A stretch of DNA of 64,000 nucleotides, from assembly GCA_048013815.1 (NCBI GenBank), contig CM106586.1, positions 13,826,001-13,890,000 on the forward strand, given 5' to 3'. The notes beneath the pieces are model-generated. The model did not search any database. It saw nothing but the letters and a program-made list of their open reading frames with translations, and was not told where the DNA came from. This DNA is from Setoptus koraiensis. Lineage: Eukaryota > Animalia > Arthropoda. The position numbers and the translations under genes were made by a program. Below are positions 30,214-48,497 of this stretch, in pieces; position 1 is the stretch's first letter, and each line of letters starts with the position of its first letter.

Positions 30214-31043
30214 TCACCGACAGCATTGACTGTGATTCGTTCGGCTACTGGCTGTGTAAAAGACTATATAGGACACTTGCGCTCCATTGATTCCACATAG
30301 GTACCAAAATCTAGTCGCCAGTTTTTTAGCGCCGTTTTTTGTGTCTGGCTGATCGGATATGTGCACAGGATGACTCACGATCTCACCGGTTGATTCTCTG
30401 GCGATGTTAATGGTGAAAATTCTTTCATCGTTTAATAATTCATGATCGAGTTTATCCAAGATATCGTTGTCCTCCAAATCTAGATTGGCTTGGACAAGGA
30501 GAACGCCTTGGCAATATTGAATTGCTCGAATCCATTTGAGAACTCGGGCATTTTCGCTTAAGCTCTTTTCCAGATCGCCTGTGTTGTCGCGAGCCGAATA
30601 TCCTTCCACAGTCAGTGGGGGTATGGTGTAGAAGGAGCCTCGTGCATATTGCTCTATCTTTTTGCAGGCTTTCTTAATTGCTTTCACAATTGAGTAGAAT
30701 TCCTCGGTTGACTGTTGCGTGTTGAACGTCAGTTTGATTGATAATTCTGAATCTGGCGTGGGCTTCAACGAATCTGCCAGAGTGATATTCTCATCCTTGT
30801 TGAAAACTGTCGGGGTAAACTTCGTGGCCAGGTTGAGTATCTTCCTCATGGAGTGAGTATCTCACTCAATTTTTTAAACTTTCTCTCGTCAATCGGCACA
30901 TTGTGTGCTTCCGAAACCTCAATGATCTTGGCCAGACTTGCTACTAATACTTCATCTTTCTCTGCCGACTTCAGTTTTTCTGCTAAAGACTTTTTACAAG
31001 TCAGGACAATTTGAGCAAACATTCGGGAGAATGGAAGCAGCAA
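30214..31043 (-). pseudogene. Truncated, frameshifted copy of the local secreted/TM protein family
   Basis: The piece FAQIVLTCKKSLAEKLKSAE (31043-30846) shifts frame near 30850 into RKILNLATKF..LKPTPD..KKACKKIEQYA..KWIRAIQYCQGVLLVQ. It lacks the signal peptide and N-terminal third, and lacks the C-terminal hydrophobic end. Confidence 0.8.
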
Positions 31044-31094
31044 AAAACAAACATGTGTAGAGAAACCTCCGGGAGAGAAATAAAAGTTTGGGGA

Positions 31095-31652
31095 CTATAA
31101 CTCTAAACTATCAAGTTGATCCATAAGTTGATTGTCGAATTTGAGCGAGGTGACTACCAGATCCTTTAGAATGTTTCTCAGTTTGTTACACTTTGCTTCC
31201 AAATTGCGTATAGTTGTCAAATAGTAATCACGCAACTGCAATTGATGAGCTTCTTGTCTTTGAAGTTTGAGTTGTCTCTCACGAACTGTCAATTTTTTGC
31301 CGCTGGATATCCCCTGTTTTTGTTGTTGTTGACAGTGGAGAGCACTATGCTTTACCTCCATTTTAGAGGAGCTAGCTCGCGTCTTTAGCGAACAAACCTC
31401 GTCTGTAATTGGCTGCATTGGACAAACTTCATTAGGATCGACCATGGGATATAGAGAATTTTGCGATTGATTCGTTTCGGCAGGCACAAATGACCATACT
31501 TCTTGTGTATTAAACTCTGGTTGTAATGATAGAATATCCAGATAAGCTAATTGGTCGTCCATAATTCTGTAATTATTTAGTAATTGTTCCATATCTTTGA
31601 AGGTTGAAGTAATTTTTGGTCTATTATAAAAATCAGGAACAAAATCCTTCAT
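31095..31652 (-). CDS. Hypothetical 185-aa protein with C-terminal basic segment and leucine-zipper-like coiled coil
   Basis: The ORF from ATG 31652 has protein-like composition. The heptad Y-x6-L-x6-L-x6-L lies in YLTTIRNLEAKCNKLRNILKDL. There is no canonical bZIP N-x7-R signature. Confidence 0.6.
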   Translation of the reverse strand: MKDFVPDFYNRPKITSTFKDMEQLLNNYRIMDDQLAYLDILSLQPEFNTQEVWSFVPAETNQSQNSLYPMVDPNEVCPMQPITDEVCSLKTRASSSKMEVKHSALHCQQQQKQGISSGKKLTVRERQLKLQRQEAHQLQLRDYYLTTIRNLEAKCNKLRNILKDLVVTSLKFDNQLMDQLDSLEL

Positions 31653-32198
31653 TACTGGACCGGCAAGTGACACTAGTGACACAAATGACACCAGTGATTG
31701 ATTAAGAAGACTCGAGGCGGCACTTAGGGCACCACACTTCGCAACAATTTCAGATCAGGGTGTCCAGCAGTACTATTAAAACATCTGTTCAACGTTTTTA
31801 CCTCTCCCTTTTCCAGCAAGCTGGACAAGTCTGCTAAATAAGAGCAATTCAACTTTATCTATTTTCTTCACTTAAGCACACACGAAACCTGTGTCGAATG
31901 TTCAAAAGATGGATGCAAATATTTGTTCCAACTGATCTCATGACATATGCGCAATTAATTTCAATAAGTTTTCAATGAGGTGCTGGCCAATTGAACTCAA
32001 TTCAGGTGACGTTATTATTAGAAATTCATAGGAAGTTGAATTCAATTGTTTGTTACGATGCGACGTATCTATTTATATCGCGATGAAACCCGAGAAAGCT
32101 CGCTAGTGAGTTGGTGATTTTATCCTAATACGATGATCTAGTCTTAATGTTCGGCTGCCTTCTTTCTGGCCTTTTCCTCTCACTCTGTTGCATTTTTC

Positions 32199-34180
32199 TC
32201 ATCCATGCGAAGAGCGATACGAGCACAATTTTACTAACAAACATACGAAAAAAGTAGTGAACAGAATTGTTGCAATACCCAAAGCAACAGCTATACCTGT
32301 CTCAGAATTATTGAGGTAGCTGGCGTGCTGAAGATCATGCCACACATTTCCCGTATGGCCAGTTGCGGTGTGAAGAACCGCATGACCGAAGGTCGCATGC
32401 CCAACAGATGCCACACTACCGCCAAACTGGACCGGACGTTCGGGATCGTCTCGATTTTTGAGCAACGATTGCTTGATCGATTCGTCGAGAACGTTTATCT
32501 GGACAAATTTCGACAACAGAAGTTCGCGCTTGCTTCCCGCTCGTCTCATCAGCCATCCGGTGAGGCCATCCGTTTGTGTGTAGCATTCGAGGTCGGTGTC
32601 GAATGAGTTGAAATTATCTGGCTGTTTGAACTTGTGCGCCGATTGTCGCAATGAATGATTTTGTCTGACCACATTGACAGTGAATATACTTTCGTCGTGT
32701 AGCACCTCTTGGTCCATTTTCTCAATGATATCGCTCTCTAAATCGACAGTGGGTTGCACGAGCAGGACGCCCTGACAATATTGCACAGCTTTGACCCATT
32801 TCTGAACGTTTGGATCGTCTTCGAGACTTCTATCGAGACTTCCAGCATCGTTTCGTGCAAAATATTCTTTCCATGCCAGCCGAGAAATCGTATATATCGA
32901 GTTCTGGGCATATTGATCAATCAACTTACACGCTTTTTTGCCTTTCACAAATTCGTCCACCATACTCTGACAGTTCAATGTTATACCCATCGAGAAATCC
33001 GCTTCCGGTGTAGGTTTCAGCGATTCAGTCAGTATGAGAGTCTCTACTTTTGTCAACACATTTGGGTTGTATTTCATCGCAAGACTTAGCAGCTTACGCG
33101 TTCTTTTATGAAGATTCTTAATCTGACTTTCGTCGATATTGGCGCCTTTTGTATCTGACAACTCATTTACAATGTCGAAGCTTCTCCTCAATTCATTATC
33201 AGTATCCTCGGCTGATTGTAATTTTTGTGCCAAAGATTTCTTACAAGTTAAAGCAACTTGACCGGCAAATAGTCTGTGGAACCGAGGTAGTCTATTCTTT
33301 CGTTTGCGTTTCAGATATTTACCTTCGCTGGCATTATCTTTTAATTGTTTGCCTAATCTCAGCAATTCATTTGCAAAGTCAGGCTCGCATACAGAGTGAA
33401 NNNNNNNNNNNNNNNNNNNNNNNNNNNNNNNNNNNNNNNNNNNNNNNNNNNNNNNNNNNNNNNNNNNNNNNNNNNNNNNNNNNNNNNNNNNNNNNNNNNN
33501 NNNNNNNNNNNNNNNNNNNNNNNNNNNNNNNNNNNNNNNNNNNNNNNNNNNNNNNNNNNNNNNNNNNNNNNNNNNNNNNNNNNNNNNNNNNNNNNNNNNN
33601 NNNNNNNNNNNNNNNNNNNNNNNNNNNNNNNNNNNNNNNNNNNNNNNNNNNNNNNNNNNNNNNNNNNNNNNNNNNNNNNNNNNNNNNNNNNNNNNNNNNN
33701 NNNNNNNNNNNNNNNNNNNNNNNNNNNNNNNNNNNNNNNNNNNNNNNNNNNNNNNNNNNNNNNNNNNNNNNNNNNNNNNNNNNNNNNNNNNNNNNNNNNN
33801 NNNNNNNNNNNNNNNNNNNNNNNNNNNNNNNNNNNNNNNNNNNNNNNNNNNNNNNNNNNNNNNNNNNNNNNNNNNNNNNNNNNNNNNNNNNNNNNNNNNN
33901 CTGTGCCAGCTTGCTCCACTATTTTCTTCAACGCCAGGATATCATCGAAACCATTTTCGCTGTGGATACACTTGTTGAGAATCCCCCTTTCTTTCCTGCT
34001 CAATGCATCTATGTTATCGTTTTTGAGCATTGTTTGTGCAAAATTCAGAAATGCAGGGATTTCCTCCATTGTCTTAACCGAAGAAACGCATAGTTCCTTG
34101 CTGATAGCTTGAGCGTCAGAAGTGTAAGTCAAACAAACATAGACCAGACAGACAATCGCAAGCAGTTTTATCTGAGCCAT
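32199..34180 (-). CDS. Secreted/TM family member 1 (493 aa once the N-run is removed)
   Basis: It starts with signal peptide MAQIKLLAIVCLVYVCLTYTSDA. Joining 33901 directly to 33400 gives ..EQAGT-V-HSVCEPDFANELL.., collinear with the paralog sequence DQAAH-I-RSVCQTDYADKLL. 280+1202=1482 nt = 494 codons. Confidence 0.85.
33401..33900. other. 500-N assembly spacer, apparently of zero real length
   Basis: Exactly 500 N. The flanks join in frame (G+TT = Val) and align to the paralogs without a gap. Confidence 0.9.
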
Positions 34181-35114
34181 TTTGCCGATTTTCTTTCGAA
34201 GCTTTAATTTTTATATTCAGGTGCAATCAATTGCTTGATGTTGATCGATGGAAAGATTATAAAGAACTCTGATCGGGACAAGAAATTAATTTTAAAAATA
34301 TCTGGAAAAATACTTTTCGTGTGCATAAAGCTTGCTTTTTCTGTAAAATAAATGGGGCCTCGAGGTTCATACCTGTCACTATTTATACTAGAGATCGAGA
34401 AGCTTGCCTCTTTGAGTTGCATTCAGCAGTCTATCTTTTGACACTATCATGAGACTGTCAGATGGTTGGAGTCATACTTATCGTGCATTTAGAGTCTACT
34501 TTTTCTGTAAAATGAGGCATATCTTTCAGGGGTTTATTTTTAAACGCTATCATGTGGTTATCTGAGTTCCGAGGGACCAATGAATATGCTCACGTCAGAA
34601 TGCCAGACATCGCGATCCAACCAGCCAGATTATTATTCAGATTATTTTTCACAATATAAGGCACATTTTTGAGAAAATCTTGACCCCGGTATTATAGGTT
34701 TTTCGTGATTTTAACCAAGACTGCGCGACTTTTCTCACTATTTTTTTATTTCACCTTATAGTTCACTGAAGAAGACGTCGTTTAGAGCGAAAATTAGCCT
34801 GGTATCTCAGCTCTCTCGGGGTGAAACGGGGCCTCAAAGTTGAAATTCTGAGAAAAGTGGGCGTGTTTGGTGAACGAAAAACCAGAAACAGAAATAAGCC
34901 AGATTTCAGGCTCCACCTGAGAGAGATCTTTCCAACCATACCCTATTTTCAATAATCGGAGACCAAAAATAAAAATACCCTAAAATGGGACAACCCCTTT
35001 GTCACAAAATCAGTCACACTCTGTTTCTCGTCAGCTGAAATTTTTCTTTTTCTTTAGTTTTCTGGAGATTTGGGAGAATGAGGGAGAACAGGGGAGTAGA
35101 AAATCAGATCGTAG

Positions 35115-35190
35115 GGAATGATTATGACAGTAAAGTTTATTATGTGAATCACTGCGTCAGAACAACATTGTCAACAAGACCGGAACCTAA
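35115..35190 (+). pseudogene. Degenerate WW-domain-like fragment
   Basis: After a CGTAG acceptor-like site the frame reads NDYDSKVYYVNHCVRTTLSTRPEP, compared with the WW consensus GRVYYVNHNTRTTQWERP. The second Trp is lost and the first Trp is not seen. Confidence 0.35.
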
Positions 35191-36836
35191 CTTTTTGAAA
35201 TTGGTTATTAGAGTCTTGATGTCACCTGAGAGCTCTTCTTCTGAATTAGGCTTCATAACCACTCCAATCTTCCGCTGAATGTTAGCCTCCATATATCCAA
35301 CTCGAGTCTCTTTCATGGTCCGAAATGAAAACCAATGAGGCTATTATTACTTACCATACGTTATGCTCACCAATCGTGAATTGAATGACCATTACATTGA
35401 ATTATCATTAAACGATAACGTTACTGAGCCAGTATCTCGCAAACGAGCTCAGGACTCTCTCAAAACTTGTTAGACTAATCTGTATTGTCAGCCAATTAAG
35501 TGATGGCAAACGAAAGAATACAGAATGAGGCACTGAGACTCTATGTCATGGGCGCAGAACAGCTTGGACTCTCTCGGCGTAATATCATAGATGTCAATGA
35601 GTGCGTCGTGTGACACATTCGCGTGTTTTATTGCGGAATGGGGAAAAGTTGGCTTATATTTTTCAGGACGAATCATCAACCATTCGAGCGTGAACTGCCA
35701 GATCACAGAACAAACTGATGAAAGCTGGGCATTTCGCAAAAATGAAGGCGACTGTGCAAATAAAAGTTATACATATGTATATATCATGCTAGCGGCTGAT
35801 ATTAGCCGTATCTGATTTTAGTTACCGTCATATAGTTGTGACATTATAGATGGGTCTCTAGCTGCTCATCAATTCACTGACAATCATGATAGCTGAATAA
35901 AAGTATCTGTCATGTAGACGGAGAGACACGAACGACGAGCAATCTAACCGAACGCATGAGAGAACTAGAGCCTCACTCATATGAGAAAAACAGATCGACT
36001 ATCCAAATCGAAAAATCTAACCAATCACCAGGCCTAGGACACGAGCATAGATTATGTAAAACAGCTTCGAGTTTCTTTTTATGAATCAATTCTGCATAAT
36101 TCAATGATACGGACCGACTTTCGTTGGTTGATGATGAACTGGAATCTGTGCTCGACGTCGATGTTGGTAGTGATTCATTTATATTAAGTTGTAGCACTCA
36201 CAGGCCTCTTATGCTTTGGCTCGATACATGGCACAATAACCACAATGGCTTCTTGCAGCTTGGTCTGGCCTCAAAGGTTTACCCTGTAAACGAAATGACA
36301 GTCAGCTTACAACGAGGAGGATTCCAGTGTTGAACCAAATCTTCCCTGAAATTACTTATTATACAGTGCACTGCCAAATGACAACGCAAAGCGCGGATAT
36401 TTTCTCTGTATTTTCACTAATCATCACAGTGTATCCTAGTGTTGCGGAGCGATCGCTTGCTCCAGGCGGGATTTTTTCGTTCCGAGAATTTTTGTCATGA
36501 TAATTGTAATCATACCATATAGTGTGCTGAAGTGCTTATCATTCTGTTGTGATGAACAAAACACCTGGGTTCATTCAGTGAGCTGCTGAATGCATCCGAT
36601 GAATGATTAGTTGTAATATTGCACAATAAACGATACAATCCATTGTATAAACTATAACAATTTTTCGCTACGAGCCAAATCTTTGCTCCAAGATAGCTCT
36701 GAGTGTGAGTTATAGAACCCGTAAAGTTCAATGAAATTATCACATTTGTCATAGGAGCTCCGCTAATACTTGCACTTTTATCTGTGCATTTTATTATTAG
36801 ATCTTATTTCATCACGGACTATGGAGGAGTGATACA

Positions 36837-38876
36837 TTAATTCACACATCTTAGCATACTAAATCTATCCTGGAAGCCCCGGCGTAATCTTTCGTTCATC
36901 CAATAATAAATTATTGGATTTGTGATGGTGTGGCACATAGAAATATGATGCGTAAAGATCCAAAAATTTTCAAGTCTTCTGATGTTTTCGATTGTAGGCT
37001 CAAGTTCGCGCATAATAAGATATATCTTAGCTGGGAGCCAGGTTAATACGAATGCTGTAAAACAGTATATCGCCATTCTGAGTGCCTAAACAAGTAGTTG
37101 TGGAATATGTTGAGTTGTAAACAGAAGCGATAGAATAGTCATTAGTTAGTAGTTTTCATTCGCAGCATCAGATTGCTTGGAAAAAAGATGGAATCGATTG
37201 GGGTTGGAGTTATAATGTGTTGAGTATCGGAATCAAGAATAGAGATCAACAAAAGGCGTCATCACTGTAGCTCAATATTGATTGCATAACAATGATATTA
37301 GTGATAGTCCTACTATACAGCTATCATGAAGGCGATAACCTGACCGGATCTATGTTGATTAACCAGTTACACTATCGGAACGCATGGCTAATCTATTTAT
37401 TTGGTGATTTTGATCAGTCTAGCCTTATGTCATATATTTGAGTCCGAGATTGCTGTGGAAATTGCTAAAGACACTTAGATCCTGATGATTAGGGCCAACC
37501 AAATCGGCGCTAGTTTTCGGTGGAAACTGGGATCCCTCAGAGTTTCCGGCAAAAGCTCGATTTTCAACAACAACAACAAAAAATTCCATGAGCGCTAAAA
37601 AAAACATAGGCAAAGCTAGACAATCTCCCCCATTTTTTTTTTCGGTTAAAACCCTCAAAGTAAGATTATTCGGCGAAAAAAGTGAACATAAACGGCCCCC
37701 GAAACGCTTCAAATAAGTAGAAAAGTAAAATGTGTGATTCAAGAATGTAACAGTAAAAAAAAAGCAAAAATCAGGTGCATGCACTAATCAACCGATCACT
37801 GGGTCACCCCAGTGAAAAAGTTATTCTGCCATACAATGTCAAGATTACATGGCTTGAGATCGTCTATGATGATAATGTGTAGCTTGGTGAAATATTGAAA
37901 CTGCATCGTATCCAACTCACCTTCTTTTTTGAACGAGCTCGTAATTCTTCTTCTCTTTCATTCACGCCGCCAGGCTTTTGGATGTTCCGAACAGTTAATA
38001 CTACTCTAGTAAATGTGATGGAAAACACAATTAGGGGGACTATAAATTGTAAAATCACCAAAACCAAATAATAGATTCGGCGCCATATAACTGATTCCCA
38101 TTTCTCAGAGCAAATTTCTGCATCTTTCTGATCCAAAGTTGTATGAATGGTTGATGGGATAGTAGTCAGGAAGGCCGCTATCCAAATAGCCCCAATGATC
38201 ATCTTGGTCTCTCGTAAAGTCAGAGGTGGCCGCAAAGGATACACAATAGCCAGGTAACGGTCAATAGATATAGCCATCATGGTATAGGTGCTTAATTTAG
38301 TACGGATGACAAAAAACATGATAGATTTGTAATTCTTGATAGAGCTGTGTGAATTTCTCTGTAATCATACTTTTCTTAAATTGCGCTTGCCCGATTGAAT
38401 TGTTGGATTGTCAGCATGAAAGGGCTCGTTATGATTGATACCAGTGGTGAAAAACGACAGAGAGACAATCGTCCTATTTTTCATCACCATCCACTCACCT
38501 GACAATGATAGAATTAGTTCCGAGATAGTTGACACAAACACATAAGGTGCTGCCCAATACCCATTTTTCGTAAATAAGATAGGAAATGAAAGTAACTGGT
38601 ATATTAATCAGTCCTATGAGTATGTCACCAAATGCTAAATTTACAATAAAATAATTTGTTGCTGTATGCATTGTTCTATCTGAAAGAACTGTATTGCAAA
38701 CAATGAGATTACTTGCGATGCTGGTGACAAATAAAAAACCGTTGAGGACATACATGGGAACCTGTGAGATTCAACAAAGTTGCAATTACTGATCTACCAA
38801 TCCGCAATGAATTCGGAGAGTCTTATTTGAAATTGATTACCAAGATACTCACTGACAACTCTGGTGAAAACTTCAT
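36837..38876 (-). CDS. RYa-R: RYamide/luqin-receptor-like class A GPCR, 4 exons, 301 aa
   Basis: Exons 38876-38853, 38761-38499, 38290-37921 and 37085-36837 have GT-AG ends and join in frame. Motifs: MHTATNYFIVNLAFGDIL, AISIDRY, RARSKKK-ALRM, TWLP, HHISMCHTITNPIIYYWMN. Exon 1 is less certain than the others. Confidence 0.8.
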
Positions 38877-39340
38877 TTTTCCTAGATATGCTTTTGAATA
38901 ATTGAATAATAGTTGAATAATTTTACTCGAACACTCAGATTAGTTCGACTCGTTGATAGTCAATTGAAACTGATTGATTGGTCGTGGTCCTTTCACAGGA
39001 AAGGTGCAATCGAAGATAGTATTGTTGAGTTAGCTGCTGCCGATCAAAACGAGTGCTGACATCTTTTTTATGATCTACAGAACCTGTACAGATATTTTGT
39101 ATAACTTATACTGTTTATAGAACAATTGTCGACTTAACTGATTGATCGATTTCTCTATCCAGGTTCGAATTCGCTGACCTCATAGCTCGGATTGTGTTCT
39201 TTTAGTCGGCACTTTCCAAAATGAAGGATACAAGGATAGTGATATGGCACTTCGAAGACGACCTCTTTCACATGAGGGCTCGAAAATTGAAATTGTTTCT
39301 GATCGGATTTTTTATGAACCCTGTCAGACACTACACTGCA

Positions 39341-39773
39341 TAGTGATCGGGAAAGACCCTTTTCCCTTTCCCTTTCCCAAATTCCAGGCTGGGAAAGAGG
39401 AGAGCCCATCCTCCATTTCCGACATTGGGAACGGGAGGGAAAGATCCCCGTGGAACCAATTCTCCCCCGGGGAACGCCCGCGGAGGGTCTAGGCATGCTT
39501 CACCGACCACCAAACCAGTAGACATGTAATAATCTACTAAAACCATTCGATTATCTCGACTCTCGACTATTTTATTCTTTCATCATTCGAAATCTCGCTT
39601 TTGGTGGTCCGTGAAACATGCTGAGAGCTTCCCCAGGCGTTCCCCGGGCATCTCCCGCCGGTTTCATATGGCGGGAAATGGGAAGCCCCCTTTCCTTCTC
39701 CCATGCCGGGGAAAAGGAAGAGAAAGGGCTTTCCCGTCGGGGAGAACTGCTTCCCGATTTCCCCCAATCACTA
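39341..39773. mobile_element. Non-autonomous hAT-type element (MITE), 433 bp
   Basis: TIRs are TAGTGATCGGG (39341-39351) and, on the reverse strand, TAGTGATTGGG (39773-39763), 10/11 identical. The 8-bp TSDs are ACACTGCA (39333-39340) and ACACTGTA (39774-39781). The GC-rich subterminal regions are diverged inverted copies of each other. Confidence 0.85.
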
Positions 39774-40324
39774 ACACTGTACTTGTATTTGTAGTACAAA
39801 TTTCGTTCCCACCGACGCAGTCTCCATCCGACAAACCTCTATCGCTTCACCGCTAGGCGGTGTTTTCGCTCGGAAGCAGACAAGAATGGAAAGTGAATTT
39901 TGGTGTGAGCAGATAAAATCTCATGTTGATTGATTGTATCTCGAGAAAATCTGACATAAATTTGAGGTGTCTCTGTGCGTTTTTGTGCATTTCTGCGTAC
40001 CGTGCGGATATTCTTGGCGATTATGTAATGCACATTCAAAACAGCCAAGAAATGTGCACATTTCTGTGTACTATAAACCCGAATCTCTCCTCAATAAGTT
40101 CTAGATGACAATAGTAAGATAAAGCGAAATAAATGTCACCAACAGCGTCGACTTGAGGAAAAAAACTCTAATCTCTAGCTTTAATTTGTTCAGAATAGTT
40201 GAAAGACTAGTTAATAGTGACCAACGTGCTCAACTAATCATCCTGATTATTATATTTTGGGCCTGCTTTGATCCTTATATTGGGGATTATTGCTATCAGT
40301 TACGACGGAGCTGTATGTATTGCT

Positions 40325-41881
40325 TTATTTGCACCAATAATCAAGTAAAAGTTTTAAAGTCATCACAAAAAACGTTCCTGCAAACGAGATAGCGAATAAT
40401 ATACCCAACTCGGCTATTGGCGAACCACCAAGATAACCAAGATGTTGAGCACCAGTAGCGGCAGCAGTTGCAAGGTGAGCCCCAGTTGTTGATGTTGCCA
40501 TTGTTGCCGCAGTGCCGCCAAATTGTACCTCACCCTCAGGATCTTGATAGTCCTGGATCAGCGATTGTTTGAACGATTCGTCTTTCACATTCACATGAAT
40601 ATATCTCGTTATTAGAAGATCACCCAATTGATTTAATAGCCACCCTTTAAGACCGTTCGCATAAGTGTAGCATACCAGATCGCTATCTAGTTCATCAAAA
40701 ATATCTCGCTGTTCAAAAATGTGAATAGATTGCTTCTCGCTGTCTGTTACTTGACCAATTCTGCTCAGATTAATTGTGATCAATTGCTCATAATGATCCA
40801 AAACATCTCTATTCAGCTTCAATAACGGTCCTTGCTCCATGTCGAGATGCATATCTACCAATAAAACACCCTGGCAATATTGGACGGTTTTTATCCACTT
40901 TTGCACACGTTCATTGCCGTTCAGACTTATATCGACACTATTTGATTCGTCTCTAGCCAGATAACCTTTCCACGCCAGTCTGGCTATTGTATAGACAGAG
41001 TTTTGTGCAAAAGACTCGATCAGATCGCAAGCCTGTCTGGTTTTCGAGAATGCATCAAATTTACCTATGTCATTTACTGTAACACCAAGAGAGAATGCAG
41101 CATCCGGTTCCGGTTTCATCGATTCTAACAGTATGATATTTTCTACTCTGTTGAATAACTTTACTTTAGTCTTTAGAATCAAGTCCAGTAGAAAATTTAT
41201 GCTAGCCGAAAGTTTTCCATTCAGTTCGGCGGAAACTGCTGATCTCGATTCATCTCTCGCATTTGCAGCATTAAGAATCAATTCAATGCTATCTACTAAT
41301 CTGCTATTATTCCTTTCGATCTCTTCCAGCTTTTGAGCAAGCGACTTCTTGCATGTGAGAATCACTTGACCGGCGAACAAACTAAAAAAACGAGATAGCC
41401 TATGCTTTTGTTTACTCGTAAAAAAGAGTATCTTATTGTGTAATATATTCTCTTTCATTCTCCTGTCGAATTTTAACAATTCATCGGCGAAGTCTTTTTG
41501 GCATACCGAATTGATACGAGAAGAATGATCAACGATTTCTTTCAGCTTCCTAAGATCACCATGACCATTAATACTGTGCATGCATCTATTCAATGTTGTT
41601 TTTTCTATCTTCACATCTTCTGTAGTAAATATTAACTTTTGGTCTTCATTAAGATTCTCCTTGTCTTGCAAAAGATGTTGCAGATGTTGTGTGGATTCTA
41701 CGTCATCTTTTATAAGTTTGCTAGCATAGAACTGAAAATCTTTGATTGTGCGGATGCTTCGAAATGCCTCCCTGCATTTTTCTTTTGTCCATAGTTCCGG
41801 TTCCGAAGTGAGGACGCCGATCGAGGAGACGCTAATGCAGACTAAGCAAACGAACAATGCGACTTCAATTGTGTACTTCAT
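40325..41881 (-). CDS. Secreted/TM family member 2, 518 aa, intronless
   Basis: Signal peptide MKYTIEVALFVCLVCISVSS, seven Cys shared with the paralogs, a Gly/Ala/Thr-rich segment, then the hydrophobic helix ELGILFAISFAGTFFVMTLKLLL. Confidence 0.9.
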   Translation of the reverse strand: MKYTIEVALFVCLVCISVSSIGVLTSEPELWTKEKCREAFRSIRTIKDFQFYASKLIKDDVESTQHLQHLLQDKENLNEDQKLIFTTEDVKIEKTTLNRCMHSINGHGDLRKLKEIVDHSSRINSVCQKDFADELLKFDRRMKENILHNKILFFTSKQKHRLSRFFSLFAGQVILTCKKSLAQKLEEIERNNSRLVDSIELILNAANARDESRSAVSAELNGKLSASINFLLDLILKTKVKLFNRVENIILLESMKPEPDAAFSLGVTVNDIGKFDAFSKTRQACDLIESFAQNSVYTIARLAWKGYLARDESNSVDISLNGNERVQKWIKTVQYCQGVLLVDMHLDMEQGPLLKLNRDVLDHYEQLITINLSRIGQVTDSEKQSIHIFEQRDIFDELDSDLVCYTYANGLKGWLLNQLGDLLITRYIHVNVKDESFKQSLIQDYQDPEGEVQFGGTAATMATSTTGAHLATAAATGAQHLGYLGGSPIAELGILFAISFAGTFFVMTLKLLLDYWCK

Positions 41882-42451
41882 TGTAGAAGTTCGGAGAAAT
41901 CTTTTGATGCTAAATACTAGCAGTTTCTATCTTGACTTGTTTTTCGATGAAAAAGTCTATCATGGATATTTGGTTGAGAGACAATAAAAAATTTCTCGGA
42001 AATGTCATCGCGGAGAAGATATCGACTTAATAAGTGATATTTTTTCGAATTCAGCAGTGTTGATTATCAGCTGGCTAAAGCGTCTGCTATAATTGTTATA
42101 AATAACTTGCCTTCAGTCTTACAGGTATATCTTTAAACATTTCTCGCTTGTGACATTCCATCGATGAGTTATTTTTAGCCCGATCCTAATTTCATGATCT
42201 AAAGATTGTGAGTCTCCTTGGGCGTAAACCACACTTTAAAATTTTTTAATTCCAATAGACCTAAAAGAATAAGTCCCGTGCCGAATATCGCTTGGATCGG
42301 ATAATTAGAATTCGCTAAAAACTTTGAGTAGTTTATCCTGTGAATCTCAAGAAACTCATGTAACTCGGCCTCTTGTTGTCCAAAAGCAACCTGAGAAATT
42401 GTTTTCTTCAATAGCACTGTCCGACAGCATAAAATTTCATTAAAGCCTGCA

Positions 42452-44020
42452 ATGAAGCATACTATTGAAACTTTATCATTTGTTTTTCTAGTCTGCATTG
42501 GATTATTCTCTGATAGAGTCTATACTTCGTCAGAAGATGGTAGCTACCCAATTCATAGTTCAGGACCTGAAACATGGACTAAAGAAATATGTAGAGATGC
42601 ATTCCGAGGTATCAAGACCATTAAAGAGTTTCAGTTTTATGCCAACAAATTGGTTAAAGACGATGTAGAATCAACCGAGCCTCAGCAAGCATCATTCATC
42701 GGCGATGTAAAGATAGATACGGCAACATTCAATAGATGTATGCACAGCGTCGATGGTATTGGTGATCTCAGAAAACTTCGAGATATTGTTGATCAAGCGG
42801 CACATATCAGGTCAGTCTGTCAAACGGACTATGCTGATAAGTTATTAGATTTCGATAGGACAATGAAGGAAAACGTGGCACATAATAAGGTTTTATTTTT
42901 CACTAGCAGGCAAAAACATAGGCTTTCTCGTTTCTTCGGTTTGTTCGCTGGTCAGGTGGTGTTGACTTGCAAAAGTTCACTCGCCCAGAAGCTAGAAGAA
43001 GCTGAAAGGAATGATGGAGAGTTAAGTGAAATCATTGATCTTATTCTGAGATCCGCAACCACGAGGGAAATTTCACAATCGCAACAGTCCGCCGCTTGGA
43101 ATAATAAATTTTCAGCTGGTGTGAATTTTCTATTGAACTTGGCTCTCAAGAGTGAAACAAAGCCATTCAATAGGGTGGAGAATATCATTCTGTTGAACTC
43201 AATGAAACCTGAACCGAACTCAGCCTTTTTCGTTGGCGTGACAATAAATGACATTGCAAAATTCGAAGCATTTTCGAAAACAAGGCAAGCTTGCTATCTG
43301 ATTGATTCCTATGCTCAAAACTCCATCTATACAATATCCAGGCTTGCATGGAAAGGCTACCTGGCCAACGACGAAAATAACATTGTCGATGTAAGTTTAG
43401 ATGGTGATGAGCGCGTACGGAAGTGGATAAAAGCCATTCAATACTGTCAGGGGGTTTTGCTGGTCAATGTCACTGTCGATATTGAACAAGAAGAGATTAT
43501 GAAGCTGAATAACGAACCATCGAATCTTATAATTGATTTAGTTAGAATAGATAATGAGAACGACAATTGGAATGAGGAGCAGCCTGCTCACATATACATG
43601 TATGAAAACTCGGACACTTTCGATGAATTCGATGACGATCTAAGATGCTACACCTATGCTGGTGGTCTTAAAGGATGGCTACTGAAGCAAGTGGGTGAAC
43701 ATTTGATCACCAAATATATTCGAGTGAATGTGAAGGACGAATCGTTCAAACAATCGCTCATGCAAGACTATCAAGATCCTGAGGGTGAGGTGCAATTTGG
43801 TGGCACAGCGATTACGATGGCAACATCAACAACTGGGACTCACGTTGCAACTGCTGCCGCCACAGCCGCTCACCATCACTATCTTGGTGGCTCGCTAATC
43901 GCTGAAATCGGTATAATAATGGCTCTAATCACAGCATGCTCATTCGTGATTGGAGTTATTGGAGGTTTTCTTATTTACTGGTGTTACGCTGCACACGAAA
44001 AGCCAGTTTTTCTCAAATAA
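42452..44020 (+). CDS. Secreted/TM family member 3, 522 aa, intronless
   Basis: Signal peptide MKHTIETLSFVFLVCIGLFS. It is collinear with member 2 (WTKEICRDAF, NRCMHS, LFAGQVVLTCK, QYCQGVLLV, DYQDPEGEVQFGG) and ends in a C-terminal TM helix. Confidence 0.9.
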   Translation: MKHTIETLSFVFLVCIGLFSDRVYTSSEDGSYPIHSSGPETWTKEICRDAFRGIKTIKEFQFYANKLVKDDVESTEPQQASFIGDVKIDTATFNRCMHSVDGIGDLRKLRDIVDQAAHIRSVCQTDYADKLLDFDRTMKENVAHNKVLFFTSRQKHRLSRFFGLFAGQVVLTCKSSLAQKLEEAERNDGELSEIIDLILRSATTREISQSQQSAAWNNKFSAGVNFLLNLALKSETKPFNRVENIILLNSMKPEPNSAFFVGVTINDIAKFEAFSKTRQACYLIDSYAQNSIYTISRLAWKGYLANDENNIVDVSLDGDERVRKWIKAIQYCQGVLLVNVTVDIEQEEIMKLNNEPSNLIIDLVRIDNENDNWNEEQPAHIYMYENSDTFDEFDDDLRCYTYAGGLKGWLLKQVGEHLITKYIRVNVKDESFKQSLMQDYQDPEGEVQFGGTAITMATSTTGTHVATAAATAAHHHYLGGSLIAEIGIIMALITACSFVIGVIGGFLIYWCYAAHEKPVFLK

Positions 44021-45789: not shown

Positions 45790-47484
45790 CTAGAGATTGC
45801 TACTTCTAAGAGCTAATGTGATTAGGTCCCACGGTCTCTGAAAATGGCTAGATGGTAGAGGCGCACAATGCAATGAATCATAGTCATTCAAGTATTTTGA
45901 AGCCAAATATAAGACAAGTTGATCCTTTGATGATCGATCCAAATCAGGTCCAATATCCACTGGATAGCATGTTTTAGTTGTTCTAAAATGGTCCAATAGT
46001 TTTCGCATGCAGTTTTTCGCATTCACTGAGTATCTATTAAGATAGTTATTTTGATGATCTGCACCACCTGCTAGGTATTCTTGCAGCAAACTTGAGGAGC
46101 GTTCATCCATCAATATGGGGAATCTTTGTTTTAAGAGATCCAGCAGCAAGTGGTTGGCCCGATTAGTTGAGGGTGAATTGTTTGGATCTGTTGCTATCAC
46201 TTCATCTTGAGTTCGACGAATAAGAAGAACGGGTCCCTGGTAATGCCGTAGATGGGCAGAATTATTCAAATCGAAATACTTATTAATAGCAACTCGAGTG
46301 AGTGGCGCCAAAACGGGTGGCATTACGTTGAGAGCTAACGGTAGTATAGAGTCAAAGCTGGCATCTATAATGAGGCCACTAATATCGGGATATCTCATGC
46401 CAGCCCATGTTGCTGTGAATCCTCCAATTGACCAGCCATGCACGATGATTGATTGTGGCTTAAAACCCAATCTATCTATGGCAAATTTTATTACCACATC
46501 TATGGCAGATGCTTCTTGGCTAGGGTAAGGTTTTCCTGAGGATCCACCAAATCCCGGATGATTCCACCCTAAAACAGAGTAACCGCATTCCAATGGTGCA
46601 TTTATTACACCTAACTCATAGAATCCTCCATTTCCCTCACAACCAATAACGAGAGTATCCCCGTTTGGAGTAGCGTTTCGACGATCCACAAATATCGAGT
46701 CAATGGAGTTTCTATCGTATGACACTAGTTTATATCTGACACCTTCATGTTCTTCAACTAATTTAGCACGACCGGCAAGAATGGCTGGTTGCATAATGGC
46801 TTGAAAAAAAGACATAGATCCAGGATAAATCATTCTGCGACCAAATGTAGCCATGATGACATAACTCAGTGATTCCATTGCATATCTCGCTACCCTTTCT
46901 AAAAAGGTTTCGTTGCCAAAACGCGATGATCTGGCGCATGGTGGAAACGTTTTCTCATAAGGACTAGGTGGATTGTTCACGTCGGCCAAACTAGAACCAT
47001 GCCATATGTAGTCGGCGGGCCAAGCTTTGAATTCAAAGTCATAATGATTCAGAATGCGTCTTGTAGCATCCGAGGGATGAGACTTGGCTCGAGCCAAGGC
47101 TCTCATGAATGCCGTGTAATCAGGATTCGTGTATCTGCCATAACCGCGCAAAGCAAATGTCGTAAGTAGAAACGCAGCTATCGTGACGACAATTTTAGCA
47201 ATGAATATTTCGTTTAAACCCGATTCACCTGTCAGAGGTATGTGTTTGTTGTAAATACAGTAGGATAATATTACCGGAGATATGTAGATTCCCGCCTGGA
47301 CGGCTATATTGATCAGTCTTAATATATTATCGCTGATCAACTCCAATTGGTTGCGCTTATAATAACGGTTTGAGCCCAATAAAGCTGCTGGCGTTTCCTC
47401 TGTCAATGATCTCCCGTTTATTTTGAAAAAAGCGTTCAATCTCGGACCAGAAGAATAGGCTAATAGGGACCTTAGAGTCGACAT
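45790..47484 (-). CDS. ABHD16A: ABHD16A (BAT5) phosphatidylserine lipase-like alpha/beta hydrolase, 564 aa, intronless
   Basis: Motifs GRRMIYPGS, LVIGCEGNGGFYELG, GYSVLGWNHPGFGGSSG, nucleophile elbow GWSIGG, IDASFD, LIRRTQDEVI, C-terminal HCAPLP, and N-terminal TM segments. The first ATG is at 47484 (the ORF-track start is TTG). Confidence 0.93.
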   Translation of the reverse strand: MSTLRSLLAYSSGPRLNAFFKINGRSLTEETPAALLGSNRYYKRNQLELISDNILRLINIAVQAGIYISPVILSYCIYNKHIPLTGESGLNEIFIAKIVVTIAAFLLTTFALRGYGRYTNPDYTAFMRALARAKSHPSDATRRILNHYDFEFKAWPADYIWHGSSLADVNNPPSPYEKTFPPCARSSRFGNETFLERVARYAMESLSYVIMATFGRRMIYPGSMSFFQAIMQPAILAGRAKLVEEHEGVRYKLVSYDRNSIDSIFVDRRNATPNGDTLVIGCEGNGGFYELGVINAPLECGYSVLGWNHPGFGGSSGKPYPSQEASAIDVVIKFAIDRLGFKPQSIIVHGWSIGGFTATWAGMRYPDISGLIIDASFDSILPLALNVMPPVLAPLTRVAINKYFDLNNSAHLRHYQGPVLLIRRTQDEVIATDPNNSPSTNRANHLLLDLLKQRFPILMDERSSSLLQEYLAGGADHQNNYLNRYSVNAKNCMRKLLDHFRTTKTCYPVDIGPDLDRSSKDQLVLYLASKYLNDYDSLHCAPLPSSHFQRPWDLITLALRSSNL

Positions 47485-48497
47485 GATTGTCTGAATTGTC
47501 AATCCAAGATACCAAATGTCAGTTATTATTATTAGTGGGTCTGTGAGGGTTTATGCCAATCTATTCTTTAAGTTGGAGATTATCATTGTTCGTGTTGAAT
47601 TCTACGTAGTGGATTATATGCATGTCATGTAAAAAAGCCCGGTCTCACTAGGAACGTTAGTTGTGGGTATTGGTATTTGTTAATCTACCTGATGGTGATG
47701 CTTTTTTCCTTGTAAATGACATAATAAATGTAGTATTAACGATTTTACTGCAAGGTACATTGCTGAATATCACTTTACAGCAGATAGATGTGTGCGTCTT
47801 TTTTTTTTCAAATGTAAACAACTCCCAGTCAACAGAACGTCCGCCAGAGGCGCTGACGACTTCGTGAAAGTAGTACAGGGTGTACCCTGAATTTGGCGCA
47901 ATCATTTGTCACTGACTTTCTATCGATATAATCGATCATAGAGCCCTCCTTTATCTGACCCCTTGAGTATAGAACGTTTTACTGTTTATCTTCATAACAA
48001 CTCTCGAGATATGTGTTGTGCACAATGCAATATCTAAATGAAGTGAAAAAAAAGTTATATGCCCATTTGAGGTGCAACAAATGCATCAAATGAACTGACA
48101 GCTCGGCCAAAGAGACTTCACAAGTCTAGTCAGTTGCACCTGAGATGAAAGGGATGACTAGAGAGAAGGTTAATGTTTTGAATGATAGTTGTATGCTTGT
48201 CGGATCATTAATAGGGCACTCATTTGGATTCATATCGGCTTATCTAGATATCAATGGAAACATGGCGGCGATTTACTTAAAAGAAACAGCGGCGGAGTGG
48301 CAAATACAAAACATTCTACTACAAAAACCTCTGTAATGATTTCAAGGGTCATGGTGAGATTAGCGACAGAAAAGAACGACTTCAACAATTCAGATATAAA
48401 TCATTCGCATTTCATTCGCGCTAAGTTTATTCAGATTTATTAATACCCACTCACAACTGTTGTCAGACATAGATTGTGCAATGTGTAAGTGTTGGTG

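What the first reader, a model, noticed from the sequence alone, without database searches (positions are those of the whole stretch)
30214..44020. Locally expanded, unrecognised family of Cys-patterned secreted/membrane-anchored proteins
Seen: three intact intronless genes of about 490-520 aa (32199-34180, 40325-41881, 42452-44020) and one broken copy (30214-31043). The intact genes have a signal peptide, seven aligned Cys (EKC/EIC/ELC, N[RK]C[MI]HS, SVC, LTCK, [QK]AC, QYCQGVLLV, LxCYT) and DPE...VQFGG before a hydrophobic end. I recognise no domain. Intronless, tandemly expanded, fast-diverging secretory genes with birth-and-death turnover are typical of host-interaction factors. A role as salivary effectors or surface proteins of a plant-feeding or parasitic mite is inference.
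Basis: partly seen in the sequence, partly recalled or inferred. Interest (0 to 1): 0.8.

Follow-up and report, generated by a model that had tools for sequence, protein, structure and literature searches.

The report
Orphan single-pass membrane protein family in mites
The window holds three intact genes and one decayed gene of a membrane-anchored protein family that matches no known family by sequence or predicted fold. The family appears confined to eriophyoid-type plant mites, and nothing yet shows that its members are salivary effectors.

Summary
Three intact paralogues and one decayed copy lie at the stated places (tblastn E 1e-26 to 1e-93), and the seven aligned Cys and the DPE..VQFGG motif are present.

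The 500-N gap inside the third gene behaves as a zero-length join:
- Contigs of three public runs pass from 33400 straight to 33901.
- The two flanks complete one codon.
- Relatives have exactly one residue at that position, which gives a 493-aa product.

The proteins are type I membrane proteins. Each has a signal peptide, a helical ectodomain likely braced by disulfides, a His/Gly/Ala/Thr-rich stalk, a transmembrane helix and a juxtamembrane Cys.

A 43-sequence AlphaFold model (pLDDT 78, pTM 0.73) matches nothing in PDB, AFDB, BFVD or the ESM Atlas. Pfam and PDB sequence profiles are blank. None of the 30 homologues checked (of 51 found) has an NCBI or UniRef source.

The neighbouring ABHD16A gene points to an eriophyoid-like mite, a group in which about 84% of genes lack introns. 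Intronlessness is therefore not informative here.

The head-to-head pair is old (dS about 1.3) and under purifying selection (dN/dS about 0.2). Birth-and-death turnover is real. The salivary-effector role is unsupported and the membrane anchor argues against it. A viral fusion-protein lead was tested and rejected. The scan holds no earlier finding of this family.

The parts
40325..41881 (-). gA: intact single-exon gene, 518 aa. Signal-like segment at residues 1-27, helical ectodomain 28-345, beta/loop module 342-445, stalk 449-487, transmembrane helix 488-517, and Cys517 at the cytoplasmic edge.
   Evidence: ORF, tblastn, hydropathy and Cys map, AlphaFold model mec6ae8bf62bb.
42452..44020 (+). 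gB: intact single-exon gene, 522 aa, 66% identical to gA. It is transcribed divergently from gA.
   Evidence: It is sister to gA in the tree, with support 100/99. dN/dS is 0.17-0.21.
41882..42451 (.). 570-bp spacer shared by the head-to-head pair gA/gB. No canonical TATA box; only TATA-like strings near each ATG.
   Evidence: Sequence and motif scan.
33901..34180 (-). gC 5' piece: signal peptide, Cys1 and Cys2, 93 codons plus one base of the next codon. A TATAAA lies 35 bp upstream of the ATG.
33401..33900 (.). Assembly gap of 500 N. It is most likely of zero real length.
   Evidence: Joint 33400->33901 in contigs of X1, X2 and X3 with no letters between. The flanks complete one codon. Relatives have one residue at this position.
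32199..33400 (-). gC 3' piece: two bases completing a codon, then 399 codons from HSVC (Cys3) to the transmembrane helix and the stop.
30214..31043 (-). Decayed copy, main body. It matches family residues of about 166-210 in one frame and 227-413 in another. Homology ends after that: there is no LxCYT motif, no DPE..VQFGG motif and no transmembrane segment.
   Evidence: It is sister to intact P0005, 59% identical over 185 columns.
31225..31672 (.). High-copy repeat that interrupts the decayed copy. It lies inside the 198-aa ORF 31095-31691, which has no Pfam match.
   Evidence: Word depth is 1600-2500 against about 100 in the flanks, and there are loose ends at 31222/31225 and 31672. Pfam is blank.
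31724..31950 (-). N-terminal remnants of the decayed copy. The Cys2 motif region (31724-31855) ends in a stop. The Cys1/VKKID region, further upstream, is in another frame with a stop right after the Cys. No intact signal peptide remains.
   Evidence: tblastn of P0005, E 0.058 alone, and frame translations. Support for this part is weaker than for the others.
40441..40722 (.). Arm of a higher-identity tract between gA and gB. Its partner is 43596-43877. It covers the membrane-proximal region, gA residues about 387-480.
   Evidence: The inverted repeat is 81% complementary, against 73% for the neighbouring arm. Third-position identity is 0.70-0.77 against 0.40-0.55 elsewhere.

Best explanation
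These genes encode members of a lineage-restricted multigene family of single-pass type I membrane proteins. So far the family is seen only in eriophyoid-type mites.

Anatomy. Sequence and alignments show it directly; the structural elements are predicted by the model:
- A cleavable-looking signal peptide.
- An ectodomain of about 420 aa, built from a helical bundle.
- Six Cys that are invariant or nearly so across the whole superfamily, enough for three disulfides, plus a seventh Cys specific to this subfamily.
- A small strand/loop module and the DPE..VQFGG motif.
- A flexible juxtamembrane stalk rich in His, Gly, Ala and Thr.
- One transmembrane helix.
- A tail of only 1-35 residues with a Cys at the cytoplasmic edge of the helix in the window's three genes and P0001, a possible palmitoylation site.

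Inferred history. The subfamily arose from an older branch of about 525 aa that keeps a conserved 45-residue cytoplasmic tail (NFK..W..LR..R...VYKP). The subfamily lost that tail. It then multiplied by tandem and inverted duplication, with occasional gene loss and local gene conversion.

Inferred working. The protein enters the ER, folds with disulfides and is displayed on the cell surface, or on the lumenal face of a secretory or endosomal compartment. There the helical ectodomain binds a partner. The His-rich stalk could make this sensitive to pH or metal ions.

They are not freely secreted effectors as encoded.
For: - Four copies are in the window.
- C100, C127, C177, C285 and C336 are invariant, and C36 nearly so, across 43 sequences that are only 15-20% identical at the extremes.
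- N- and C-terminal hydrophobic segments are present in every intact member.
- Distant members also have a transmembrane segment, followed by a conserved tail.
- The AlphaFold model built on 43 sequences has pLDDT 78 and pTM 0.73. pLDDT is above 90 in most of residues 90-210 and 270-340. The stalk is disordered and there is a terminal transmembrane helix.
- Purifying selection: dN/dS 0.17-0.21 for gA/gB, with dS 1.2-1.4.
- The tree shows three old lineages that have counterparts in other mites.
- Tandem pairs occur in relatives: P0006-P0004 on L004. P0051 and P0012 appear to share contig L007, judged from matching gene and contig lengths, not from sequence.
- No known family matches.
- The neighbouring ABHD16A is closest to that of Aceria tosichella.
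Against: - No function has been measured.
- Evidence of expression is one 237-nt contig, 97.5% identical to gC, from a run only guessed to be RNA.
- Signal peptide and transmembrane calls rest on hydropathy, not on a trained predictor.
- gA ends right after its hydrophobic tail, so a GPI anchor cannot be excluded for that copy.
- N-glycosylation sequons are few (1-3) and not conserved.
- The disulfide pairing is not known.
- Two relatives lack the anchor, so soluble forms may exist.
Confidence: 0.62

Rival explanations
1. They are salivary or otherwise secreted host-interaction effectors. The ectodomain is released by shedding, or anchor-less copies are secreted into the plant.
For: - The organism is a plant-feeding type of mite.
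- The family is lineage-restricted and multi-copy, with turnover.
- It diverges faster than the neighbouring housekeeping gene: 51-52% identity to the closest relatives of gA, against 74-87% for ABHD16A in the same run.
- Two relatives (P0002, P0006) end just before the transmembrane segment.
Against: - Every intact window copy keeps the transmembrane helix and a Cys near its cytoplasmic end.
- The secretome criterion used for Aculops lycopersici excludes proteins with a transmembrane segment beyond the first 60 residues (PMC7738191).
- dN/dS of about 0.2 shows no sign of an arms race.
- In the anchor-less relatives, transmembrane-like coding sequence still follows the stop or lies in another frame. 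They may simply be decaying.
- There are no salivary expression data.
Confidence: 0.13
2. They are distant, unrecognised members of a known family of Cys-braced helical ectodomain proteins, for example an OSTM1-like accessory subunit of a channel or transporter, or a glypican-like surface protein.
For: - The overall plan is the same: signal peptide, Cys-containing helical ectodomain, a stalk, and a C-terminal anchor.
- Glypican-1 appears at rank 26 in AFDB Swiss-Prot.
Against: - No Pfam hit at E <= 1 to any family is shared by more than 2 of the 43 members. OSTM1 and glypican families are not among the 25 families listed.
- The Cys count of 6-7 differs from the 14 of glypicans (number from my own knowledge).
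Confidence: 0.1
3. They are domesticated viral class I fusion glycoproteins of the paramyxovirus F, baculovirus F or errantivirus Env type.
For: - The language-model feature search put Fusion_gly and Baculo_F clusters first, with scores 0.89-0.90.
- The layout fits: signal peptide, long helices, C-terminal transmembrane helix.
- A conserved basic-then-hydrophobic stretch (KHRLSRFF.LFAGQV) resembles a cleavage site followed by a fusion peptide.
Against: - The recognition value of 1556 is below the tool's 2300 mark.
- The distant member P0029 gives no such hits; its best score is 0.71.
- Foldseek against BFVD and PDB finds nothing (TM <= 0.14).
- There is no Pfam hit.
- There is no R-x-K/R-R site in gA, gB or gC.
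- The candidate 'fusion peptide' lies within a confident helix and is not preceded by basic residues in the distant branch.
- No relatives turned up in IMG/VR contigs.
- Relatives sit among ordinary host genes with no retroelement genes beside them.
Confidence: 0.03
4. They are chance ORFs or dead genes with no function.
For: One of the four copies is clearly decayed. Expression is unproven.
Against: - The three ORFs of about 500 codons are intact.
- dN/dS is about 0.2 over dS of about 1.3.
- Cys are invariant across sequences only 15-20% identical.
- The co-evolution signal is strong enough to lift AlphaFold from pLDDT 57 to 78 when more relatives are added.
Confidence: 0.02

Closest known systems
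OSTM1 (Pfam OSTMP1), a type I membrane accessory subunit of the CLC-7 transporter
   Different: There is no sequence-profile match and the structural score is at background level. The ectodomain here is about twice as long and has an extra strand/loop module and a His-rich stalk. OSTM1 is single-copy and widely conserved, whereas this family is multi-copy and lineage-restricted.
Glypicans (Pfam Glypican)
   Same: Length of about 520-560 aa, signal peptide, elongated Cys-stabilised helical core, flexible stalk and a C-terminal hydrophobic anchor signal.
   Different: Foldseek gives E 2.4 and TM 0.10, and there is no Pfam match. There are 6-7 conserved Cys rather than 14. Most members have a true transmembrane helix plus a cytoplasmic tail rather than a GPI signal. 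No Ser-Gly glycosaminoglycan sites were noted.
Class I viral fusion glycoproteins (Pfam Fusion_gly, Baculo_F, Gypsy env)
   Same: Type I topology, long helices and a similar length. They were the top hits of the feature-based Atlas search.
   Different: See the membership test. Fold, Pfam, cleavage site, viral distribution and genomic context were all tested and none was met.
Predicted secretome and candidate effectors of eriophyoid and spider mites (PMC7738191 and the work it cites)
   Same: Lineage-specific proteins with a signal peptide, no recognisable domain, and multiple copies in a plant-feeding mite.
   Different: Those sets are defined as lacking a transmembrane segment. These proteins have a conserved C-terminal helix and are much larger than the described spider-mite effector families (size from my own knowledge).

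Membership tests
Class I viral fusion glycoprotein (paramyxovirus F / baculovirus F / errantivirus Env) | Sequence-profile match to PF00523, PF12259 or PF07253 | tested here: not met
   Pfam scan of the window proteins and of all 43 aligned members at E <= 1 gave no such hit.
Class I viral fusion glycoprotein (paramyxovirus F / baculovirus F / errantivirus Env) | Fold shared with solved or predicted F or Env structures | tested here: not met
   Foldseek against PDB and BFVD gave best E of 0.3-0.9 and TM <= 0.14, with no fusion protein among the listed matches. A wide VIA search gave none either.
Class I viral fusion glycoprotein (paramyxovirus F / baculovirus F / errantivirus Env) | Furin-type cleavage site directly before a hydrophobic fusion peptide | tested here: not met
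   There is no R-x-[KR]-R in gA, gB or gC. The KHR-LSRFF stretch lies within a confident helix and loses its basic residues in the distant branch.
Class I viral fusion glycoprotein (paramyxovirus F / baculovirus F / errantivirus Env) | Relatives in viruses, or next to gag/pol genes in retroelements | tested here: not met
   No relatives in IMG/VR, though the search was limited to two peptide patterns. The neighbours of relatives are ordinary host genes.
OSTM1 | Match to Pfam OSTMP1 and to the OSTM1 lumenal fold | tested here: not met
Glypican | Match to Pfam Glypican, the 14-Cys pattern and the fold | tested here: not met
   Glypican is not among the families listed. There are 6-7 conserved Cys. 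Foldseek to glypican-1 gave E 2.4 and TM 0.10.
Secreted (salivary) effector of a herbivorous mite | N-terminal signal peptide | tested here: met
   A hydrophobic N-terminal segment is followed by small residues in gA, gB and gC. This is a heuristic only; no SignalP was run.
Secreted (salivary) effector of a herbivorous mite | No transmembrane segment beyond the N-terminus (criterion of PMC7738191) | tested here: not met
   A C-terminal hydrophobic stretch of 19 or more residues (mean Kyte-Doolittle > 2) is present in gA, gB and gC. It is modelled as a helix with pLDDT 86-96.
Secreted (salivary) effector of a herbivorous mite | Expression in salivary glands, or presence in saliva or host tissue | not testable with these tools
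   The only hint of transcription is one 237-nt contig from a run guessed to be RNA.
The family itself (this report's definition) | Six conserved ectodomain Cys in the order C..C..VC..LTCK..C..QxCQG, plus a C-terminal transmembrane segment | tested here: met
   gA, gB and gC carry all six, plus the subfamily Cys of LxCYT. The decayed copy keeps only Cys5 and Cys6 in frame within its ORF 30214-30849; Cys4 lies in the adjoining frame piece at 30900-31043.

The most novel reading that the evidence does not exclude
The ectodomain is a new protein fold, and the family is an innovation of eriophyoid mites. An ancestral copy with a cytoplasmic tail would serve a cellular role such as trafficking or an accessory-subunit function. 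The tail-less expanded branch would work at the interface between the mite and its plant host, or the plant viruses it carries. Examples would be a surface receptor in the gut or salivary gland, or an ectodomain that is shed.
Probability: 0.15. Interest if true: 0.7.

Novelty: categorically new. Interest (0 to 1): 0.42.

Why it matters
Eriophyoid mites are the smallest plant-feeding animals. They are major crop pests and virus vectors, and their genomes are stripped to about ten thousand genes. A multi-copy family kept under purifying selection in such a genome is likely to do something important for this lineage.

The family has no relative in Pfam, PDB, AFDB, BFVD or the ESM Atlas. It is also absent from the curated protein databases for the 30 homologues checked. 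It is therefore a clean target for structure determination and for localisation studies.

The result also corrects two easy misreadings. In these genomes intronless genes are the rule, not a mark of effectors. The conserved membrane anchor makes a simple secreted-effector model unlikely.

Without expression or functional data this remains one orphan family among many in poorly studied arthropods.

Tried and rejected
- Viral class I fusion lead from the Atlas feature search. Rejected by Foldseek against BFVD and PDB, by Pfam, by the lack of the same hits for the distant member P0029, by the absence of a furin site and by a blank IMG/VR scan.
- First AlphaFold run with 10 sequences. It gave pLDDT 57 and a meaningless Foldseek list, and was superseded by the 43-sequence run.
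- Fold searches of the better model in PDB, AFDB clusters, AFDB Swiss-Prot, ESM Atlas and BFVD, plus VIA wide and VIA second look. Nothing rose above background.
- PDB sequence profile search. The best hit, PAIP1, had E 0.35 and is chance.
With A2 there were no relatives in viral or JGI metagenome contigs.
- Synteny test. The ABHD16A loci of two relatives (L008, L009) do not carry family members nearby. A 520-aa unannotated neighbour proved to be the N-terminal part of a trypsin-like gene.
- Full-text search for family motifs and for the run accessions found no papers.
- The scan's own index holds no look-alike.
- dS between gC and gA or gB is saturated, so no dN/dS could be computed for those pairs.
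I could not read model coordinates, so the disulfide pairing is not assigned.
Full report
**What is in the window.** tblastn of the two complete proteins against the whole window finds four copies and no more.
- gA is at 40325-41881 on the minus strand and encodes 518 aa.
- gB is at 42452-44020 on the plus strand and encodes 522 aa. It is 66% identical to gA and the two genes lie head to head across a 570-bp spacer.
- gC is at 32199-34180 on the minus strand and is split by the N run at 33401-33900.
- A decayed copy lies at 30214-31031 on the minus strand, in two reading frames.

The alignments show the seven aligned Cys, at gA positions 36, 100, 127, 177, 285, 336 and 404. All three intact genes begin with a hydrophobic signal-like segment and end with a strongly hydrophobic segment.

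**The gap.** With 500 N as written, the two gC pieces sit in different frames, but the length of an N run is arbitrary. Three independent lines say the true gap is about zero.
- The 5' piece is 280 bases, which is 93 codons plus one base. The 3' piece is 1202 bases, which is two bases plus 399 codons and the stop. Together they make 1482 bases, a multiple of three.
- The 5' piece ends in the family motif ..IVEQAGT and the 3' piece starts at HSVC. Every relative has exactly one residue between these motifs.
- Logan contigs of three runs (X1, X2, X3) pass from 33400 to 33901 with no letters between (tables 5 and 5c).

The short side of that joint is 28 letters, just under the tool's 31-letter rule, so a direct PCR or a long read would still be worth having. 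I read gC through only with X at the gap.

**The decayed copy.** Its main body corresponds to family residues of about 166-210 in one frame and 227-413 in another. After that, homology stops. There is no LxCYT motif, no DPE..VQFGG motif and no transmembrane segment, and a search with its closest relative finds nothing further downstream.

Upstream, a segment at 31225-31672 has 15- to 25-fold the read-word depth of its flanks. It also has loose ends at both borders in all three DNA runs. It is a high-copy repeat that sits inside the gene.

Beyond it lie weaker remnants of the N-terminal part. The Cys2 motif region at 31724-31855 ends in a stop. The Cys1 region just upstream is in another frame, with a stop right after the Cys. 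I describe the lesions only and did not read it through with real letters.

**What the protein is.** Pfam finds nothing for the window proteins or for any of 43 aligned relatives, and a profile search of all PDB sequences is blank.

An exhaustive profile search of 1.84 billion cluster representatives finds only 51 relatives. Thirty of them were looked up. All come from Logan, ENA or JGI assemblies, and none from NCBI or UniRef.

The relatives fall into three groups:
- A close branch with a short tail or none, which includes the window genes.
- A branch of about 525 aa that has the same ectodomain and transmembrane helix, plus a conserved 45-residue cytoplasmic tail (NFK..W..LR..R...VYKP).
- A shorter branch of about 400-440 aa without an anchor.

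C100, C127, C177, C285 and C336 are invariant, and C36 nearly so, over all 43 sequences, although identity falls to 15-20%.

**Structure.** AlphaFold gave pLDDT 57 with ten sequences. With 43 sequences it gave pLDDT 78 and pTM 0.73. The model has these parts:
- A helical domain over residues 28-345, with pLDDT above 90 in most of 90-210 and 270-340.
- A few short strands over residues 342-445.
- A disordered stalk over residues 449-487.
- A terminal transmembrane helix.

This model matches nothing.
- Foldseek against PDB, AFDB clusters, AFDB Swiss-Prot and BFVD gave best E of 0.3-0.9 and TM <= 0.14.
- The ESM Atlas search gave TM <= 0.28.
- The second-look alignment of Foldseek's own matches gave nothing either.

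The tools warn that a missing match does not prove a new fold, and the ectodomain could not be searched on its own.

**Viral lead, tested and dropped.** The feature-based Atlas search ranked paramyxovirus F and baculovirus F clusters first for gA. If true, that would make these genes domesticated envelope genes. The evidence against it:
- The recognition value was low.
- The distant member P0029 gives no such hits.
- There is no fold or Pfam match.
- There is no furin-type site.
- The fusion-peptide-like stretch lies within a confident helix.
- IMG/VR holds no relative.
- Relatives lie among ordinary host genes such as Med23, kinesin, dymeclin and RINT1.

**Whose genome.** The neighbouring 570-aa ORF at 45790-47502 is an ABHD16A orthologue. 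Its best named relative is from the wheat curl mite Aceria tosichella, at 54% identity, well above Tetranychus urticae at 43%. The window's genes, and those on relatives' contigs, are mostly single long ORFs. This fits an eriophyoid-type mite.

The one described eriophoid genome has 83.7% intronless genes (PMC7738191). Intronlessness is therefore the default here and carries no functional hint. That paper's secretome definition also excludes proteins with a transmembrane segment outside the first 60 residues.

**Evolution.** A maximum-likelihood tree gives these groupings:
- gA and gB are sisters (100/99). They sit inside a clade with P0001 and P0002.
- gC groups with P0010, P0007 and P0005 (97/97).
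- The decayed copy is sister to the intact P0005 (100/98).

At least three lineages therefore predate the split from the related mites. Only gA/gB is a local duplication, and it is old: dS 1.2-1.4, dN 0.24, dN/dS 0.17-0.21.

Within that pair the membrane-proximal region (gA residues about 411-486) is 82-90% identical at the DNA level. Its third-position identity is 0.70-0.77, against 0.40-0.55 elsewhere. This is best read as local gene conversion between the inverted arms.

Relatives also occur as tandem pairs, for example P0006-P0004. P0051 and P0012 appear to share one contig, judged from matching gene and contig lengths. The run that supplies every relative whose contig was traced holds two different ABHD16A orthologues, 87% and 74% identical to the window's. 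It is therefore a mixed sample, and copy numbers per species cannot be read from it.

The family diverges faster than ABHD16A. The closest relatives of gA are 51-52% identical, while ABHD16A in the same run is 74-87% identical.

**Function.** Nothing measured bears on function. The only sign of transcription is one 237-nt contig, 97.5% identical to gC, from a run guessed to be RNA.

From the anatomy I infer a surface or lumenal membrane protein whose helical ectodomain binds a partner. The features behind this are:
- The conserved transmembrane helix.
- The Cys at its cytoplasmic edge in gA, gB, gC and P0001.
- The His-rich stalk present in most members of the close branch.

Two relatives lack the anchor. 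In both, transmembrane-like coding sequence still follows an in-frame stop or lies in another frame. They are either recent soluble variants or early pseudogenes. The effector reading stays alive only through such forms or through shedding.

**Verdict.** This is a real family with no recognisable relatives. It is restricted, as far as can be seen, to eriophyoid-type mites, and it is anchored in the membrane and under purifying selection. Its functional inference is not supported, and one of its arguments, intronlessness, does not apply. The scan's index holds no earlier finding of this family.

Noticed in passing
window 31225-31672 (inside ORF 31095-31691): A roughly 448-bp segment with 15- to 25-fold the word depth of its flanks in three DNA runs. 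Contigs from other genomic copies run on into unlike sequence at both borders. The loose-end consensus on the two sides contains mutually reverse-complementary strings (GGGTAGGGCAAATCG / CGATTTGCCCTACCC). This suggests the segment is the inner part of an element with inverted ends. The 198-aa ORF has no Pfam match.
   Followed up: partly
window 40441-40722 and 43596-43877: The membrane-proximal part of the inverted paralogues gA and gB is much more alike than the rest: 81-90% nt identity and third-position identity 0.70-0.77 against 0.40-0.55. This looks like local gene conversion between the arms, similar to what another note reports for a nearby inverted gene pair.
   Followed up: partly
window 39466-39514 / 39600-39648: A GC-rich 49-nt inverted repeat, 84% complementary with 85 nt between the arms, in the spacer between the GPCR gene and gA. 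It looks like a small MITE.
   Followed up: no
window 37864-38319 and 38495-38755 (-): Two exons of a rhodopsin-family GPCR (7tm_1, E 1e-23 and 8e-16) lie between gC and gA. The family cluster is therefore interrupted by an unrelated gene, and that gene does have introns.
   Followed up: partly
window 45790-47502 (-): A single-exon ABHD16A orthologue. Its best named relative is from Aceria tosichella (54%), which identifies the genome as that of an eriophyoid-type mite.
   Followed up: yes
L008 and L009 (run SRR33593474): One public run carries two distinct ABHD16A orthologues, 74% and 87% identical to the window's. It therefore contains at least two related mite species, and family copy numbers from it cannot be assigned to one genome.
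   Followed up: partly
L004 about 2267-2340; L006 about 4067-4200: In the anchor-less relatives P0006 and P0002, sequence coding for a transmembrane-like segment follows directly after an in-frame stop (P0006) or lies in another frame (P0002). These are two independent losses of the anchor.
   Followed up: partly
window 34303-34349 and 34467-34513: A 47-nt direct repeat (74% identical, 164 bp apart) in the upstream region of gC. It may be a duplicated promoter element or chance.
   Followed up: no
window 30852-30857 and 31015: One run (X3) carries small indels (1, 1 and 6 bases left out; 3 put in) at the frame break of the decayed copy. These are absent from X1 and X2, so the pseudogene is polymorphic between samples.
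   Followed up: no
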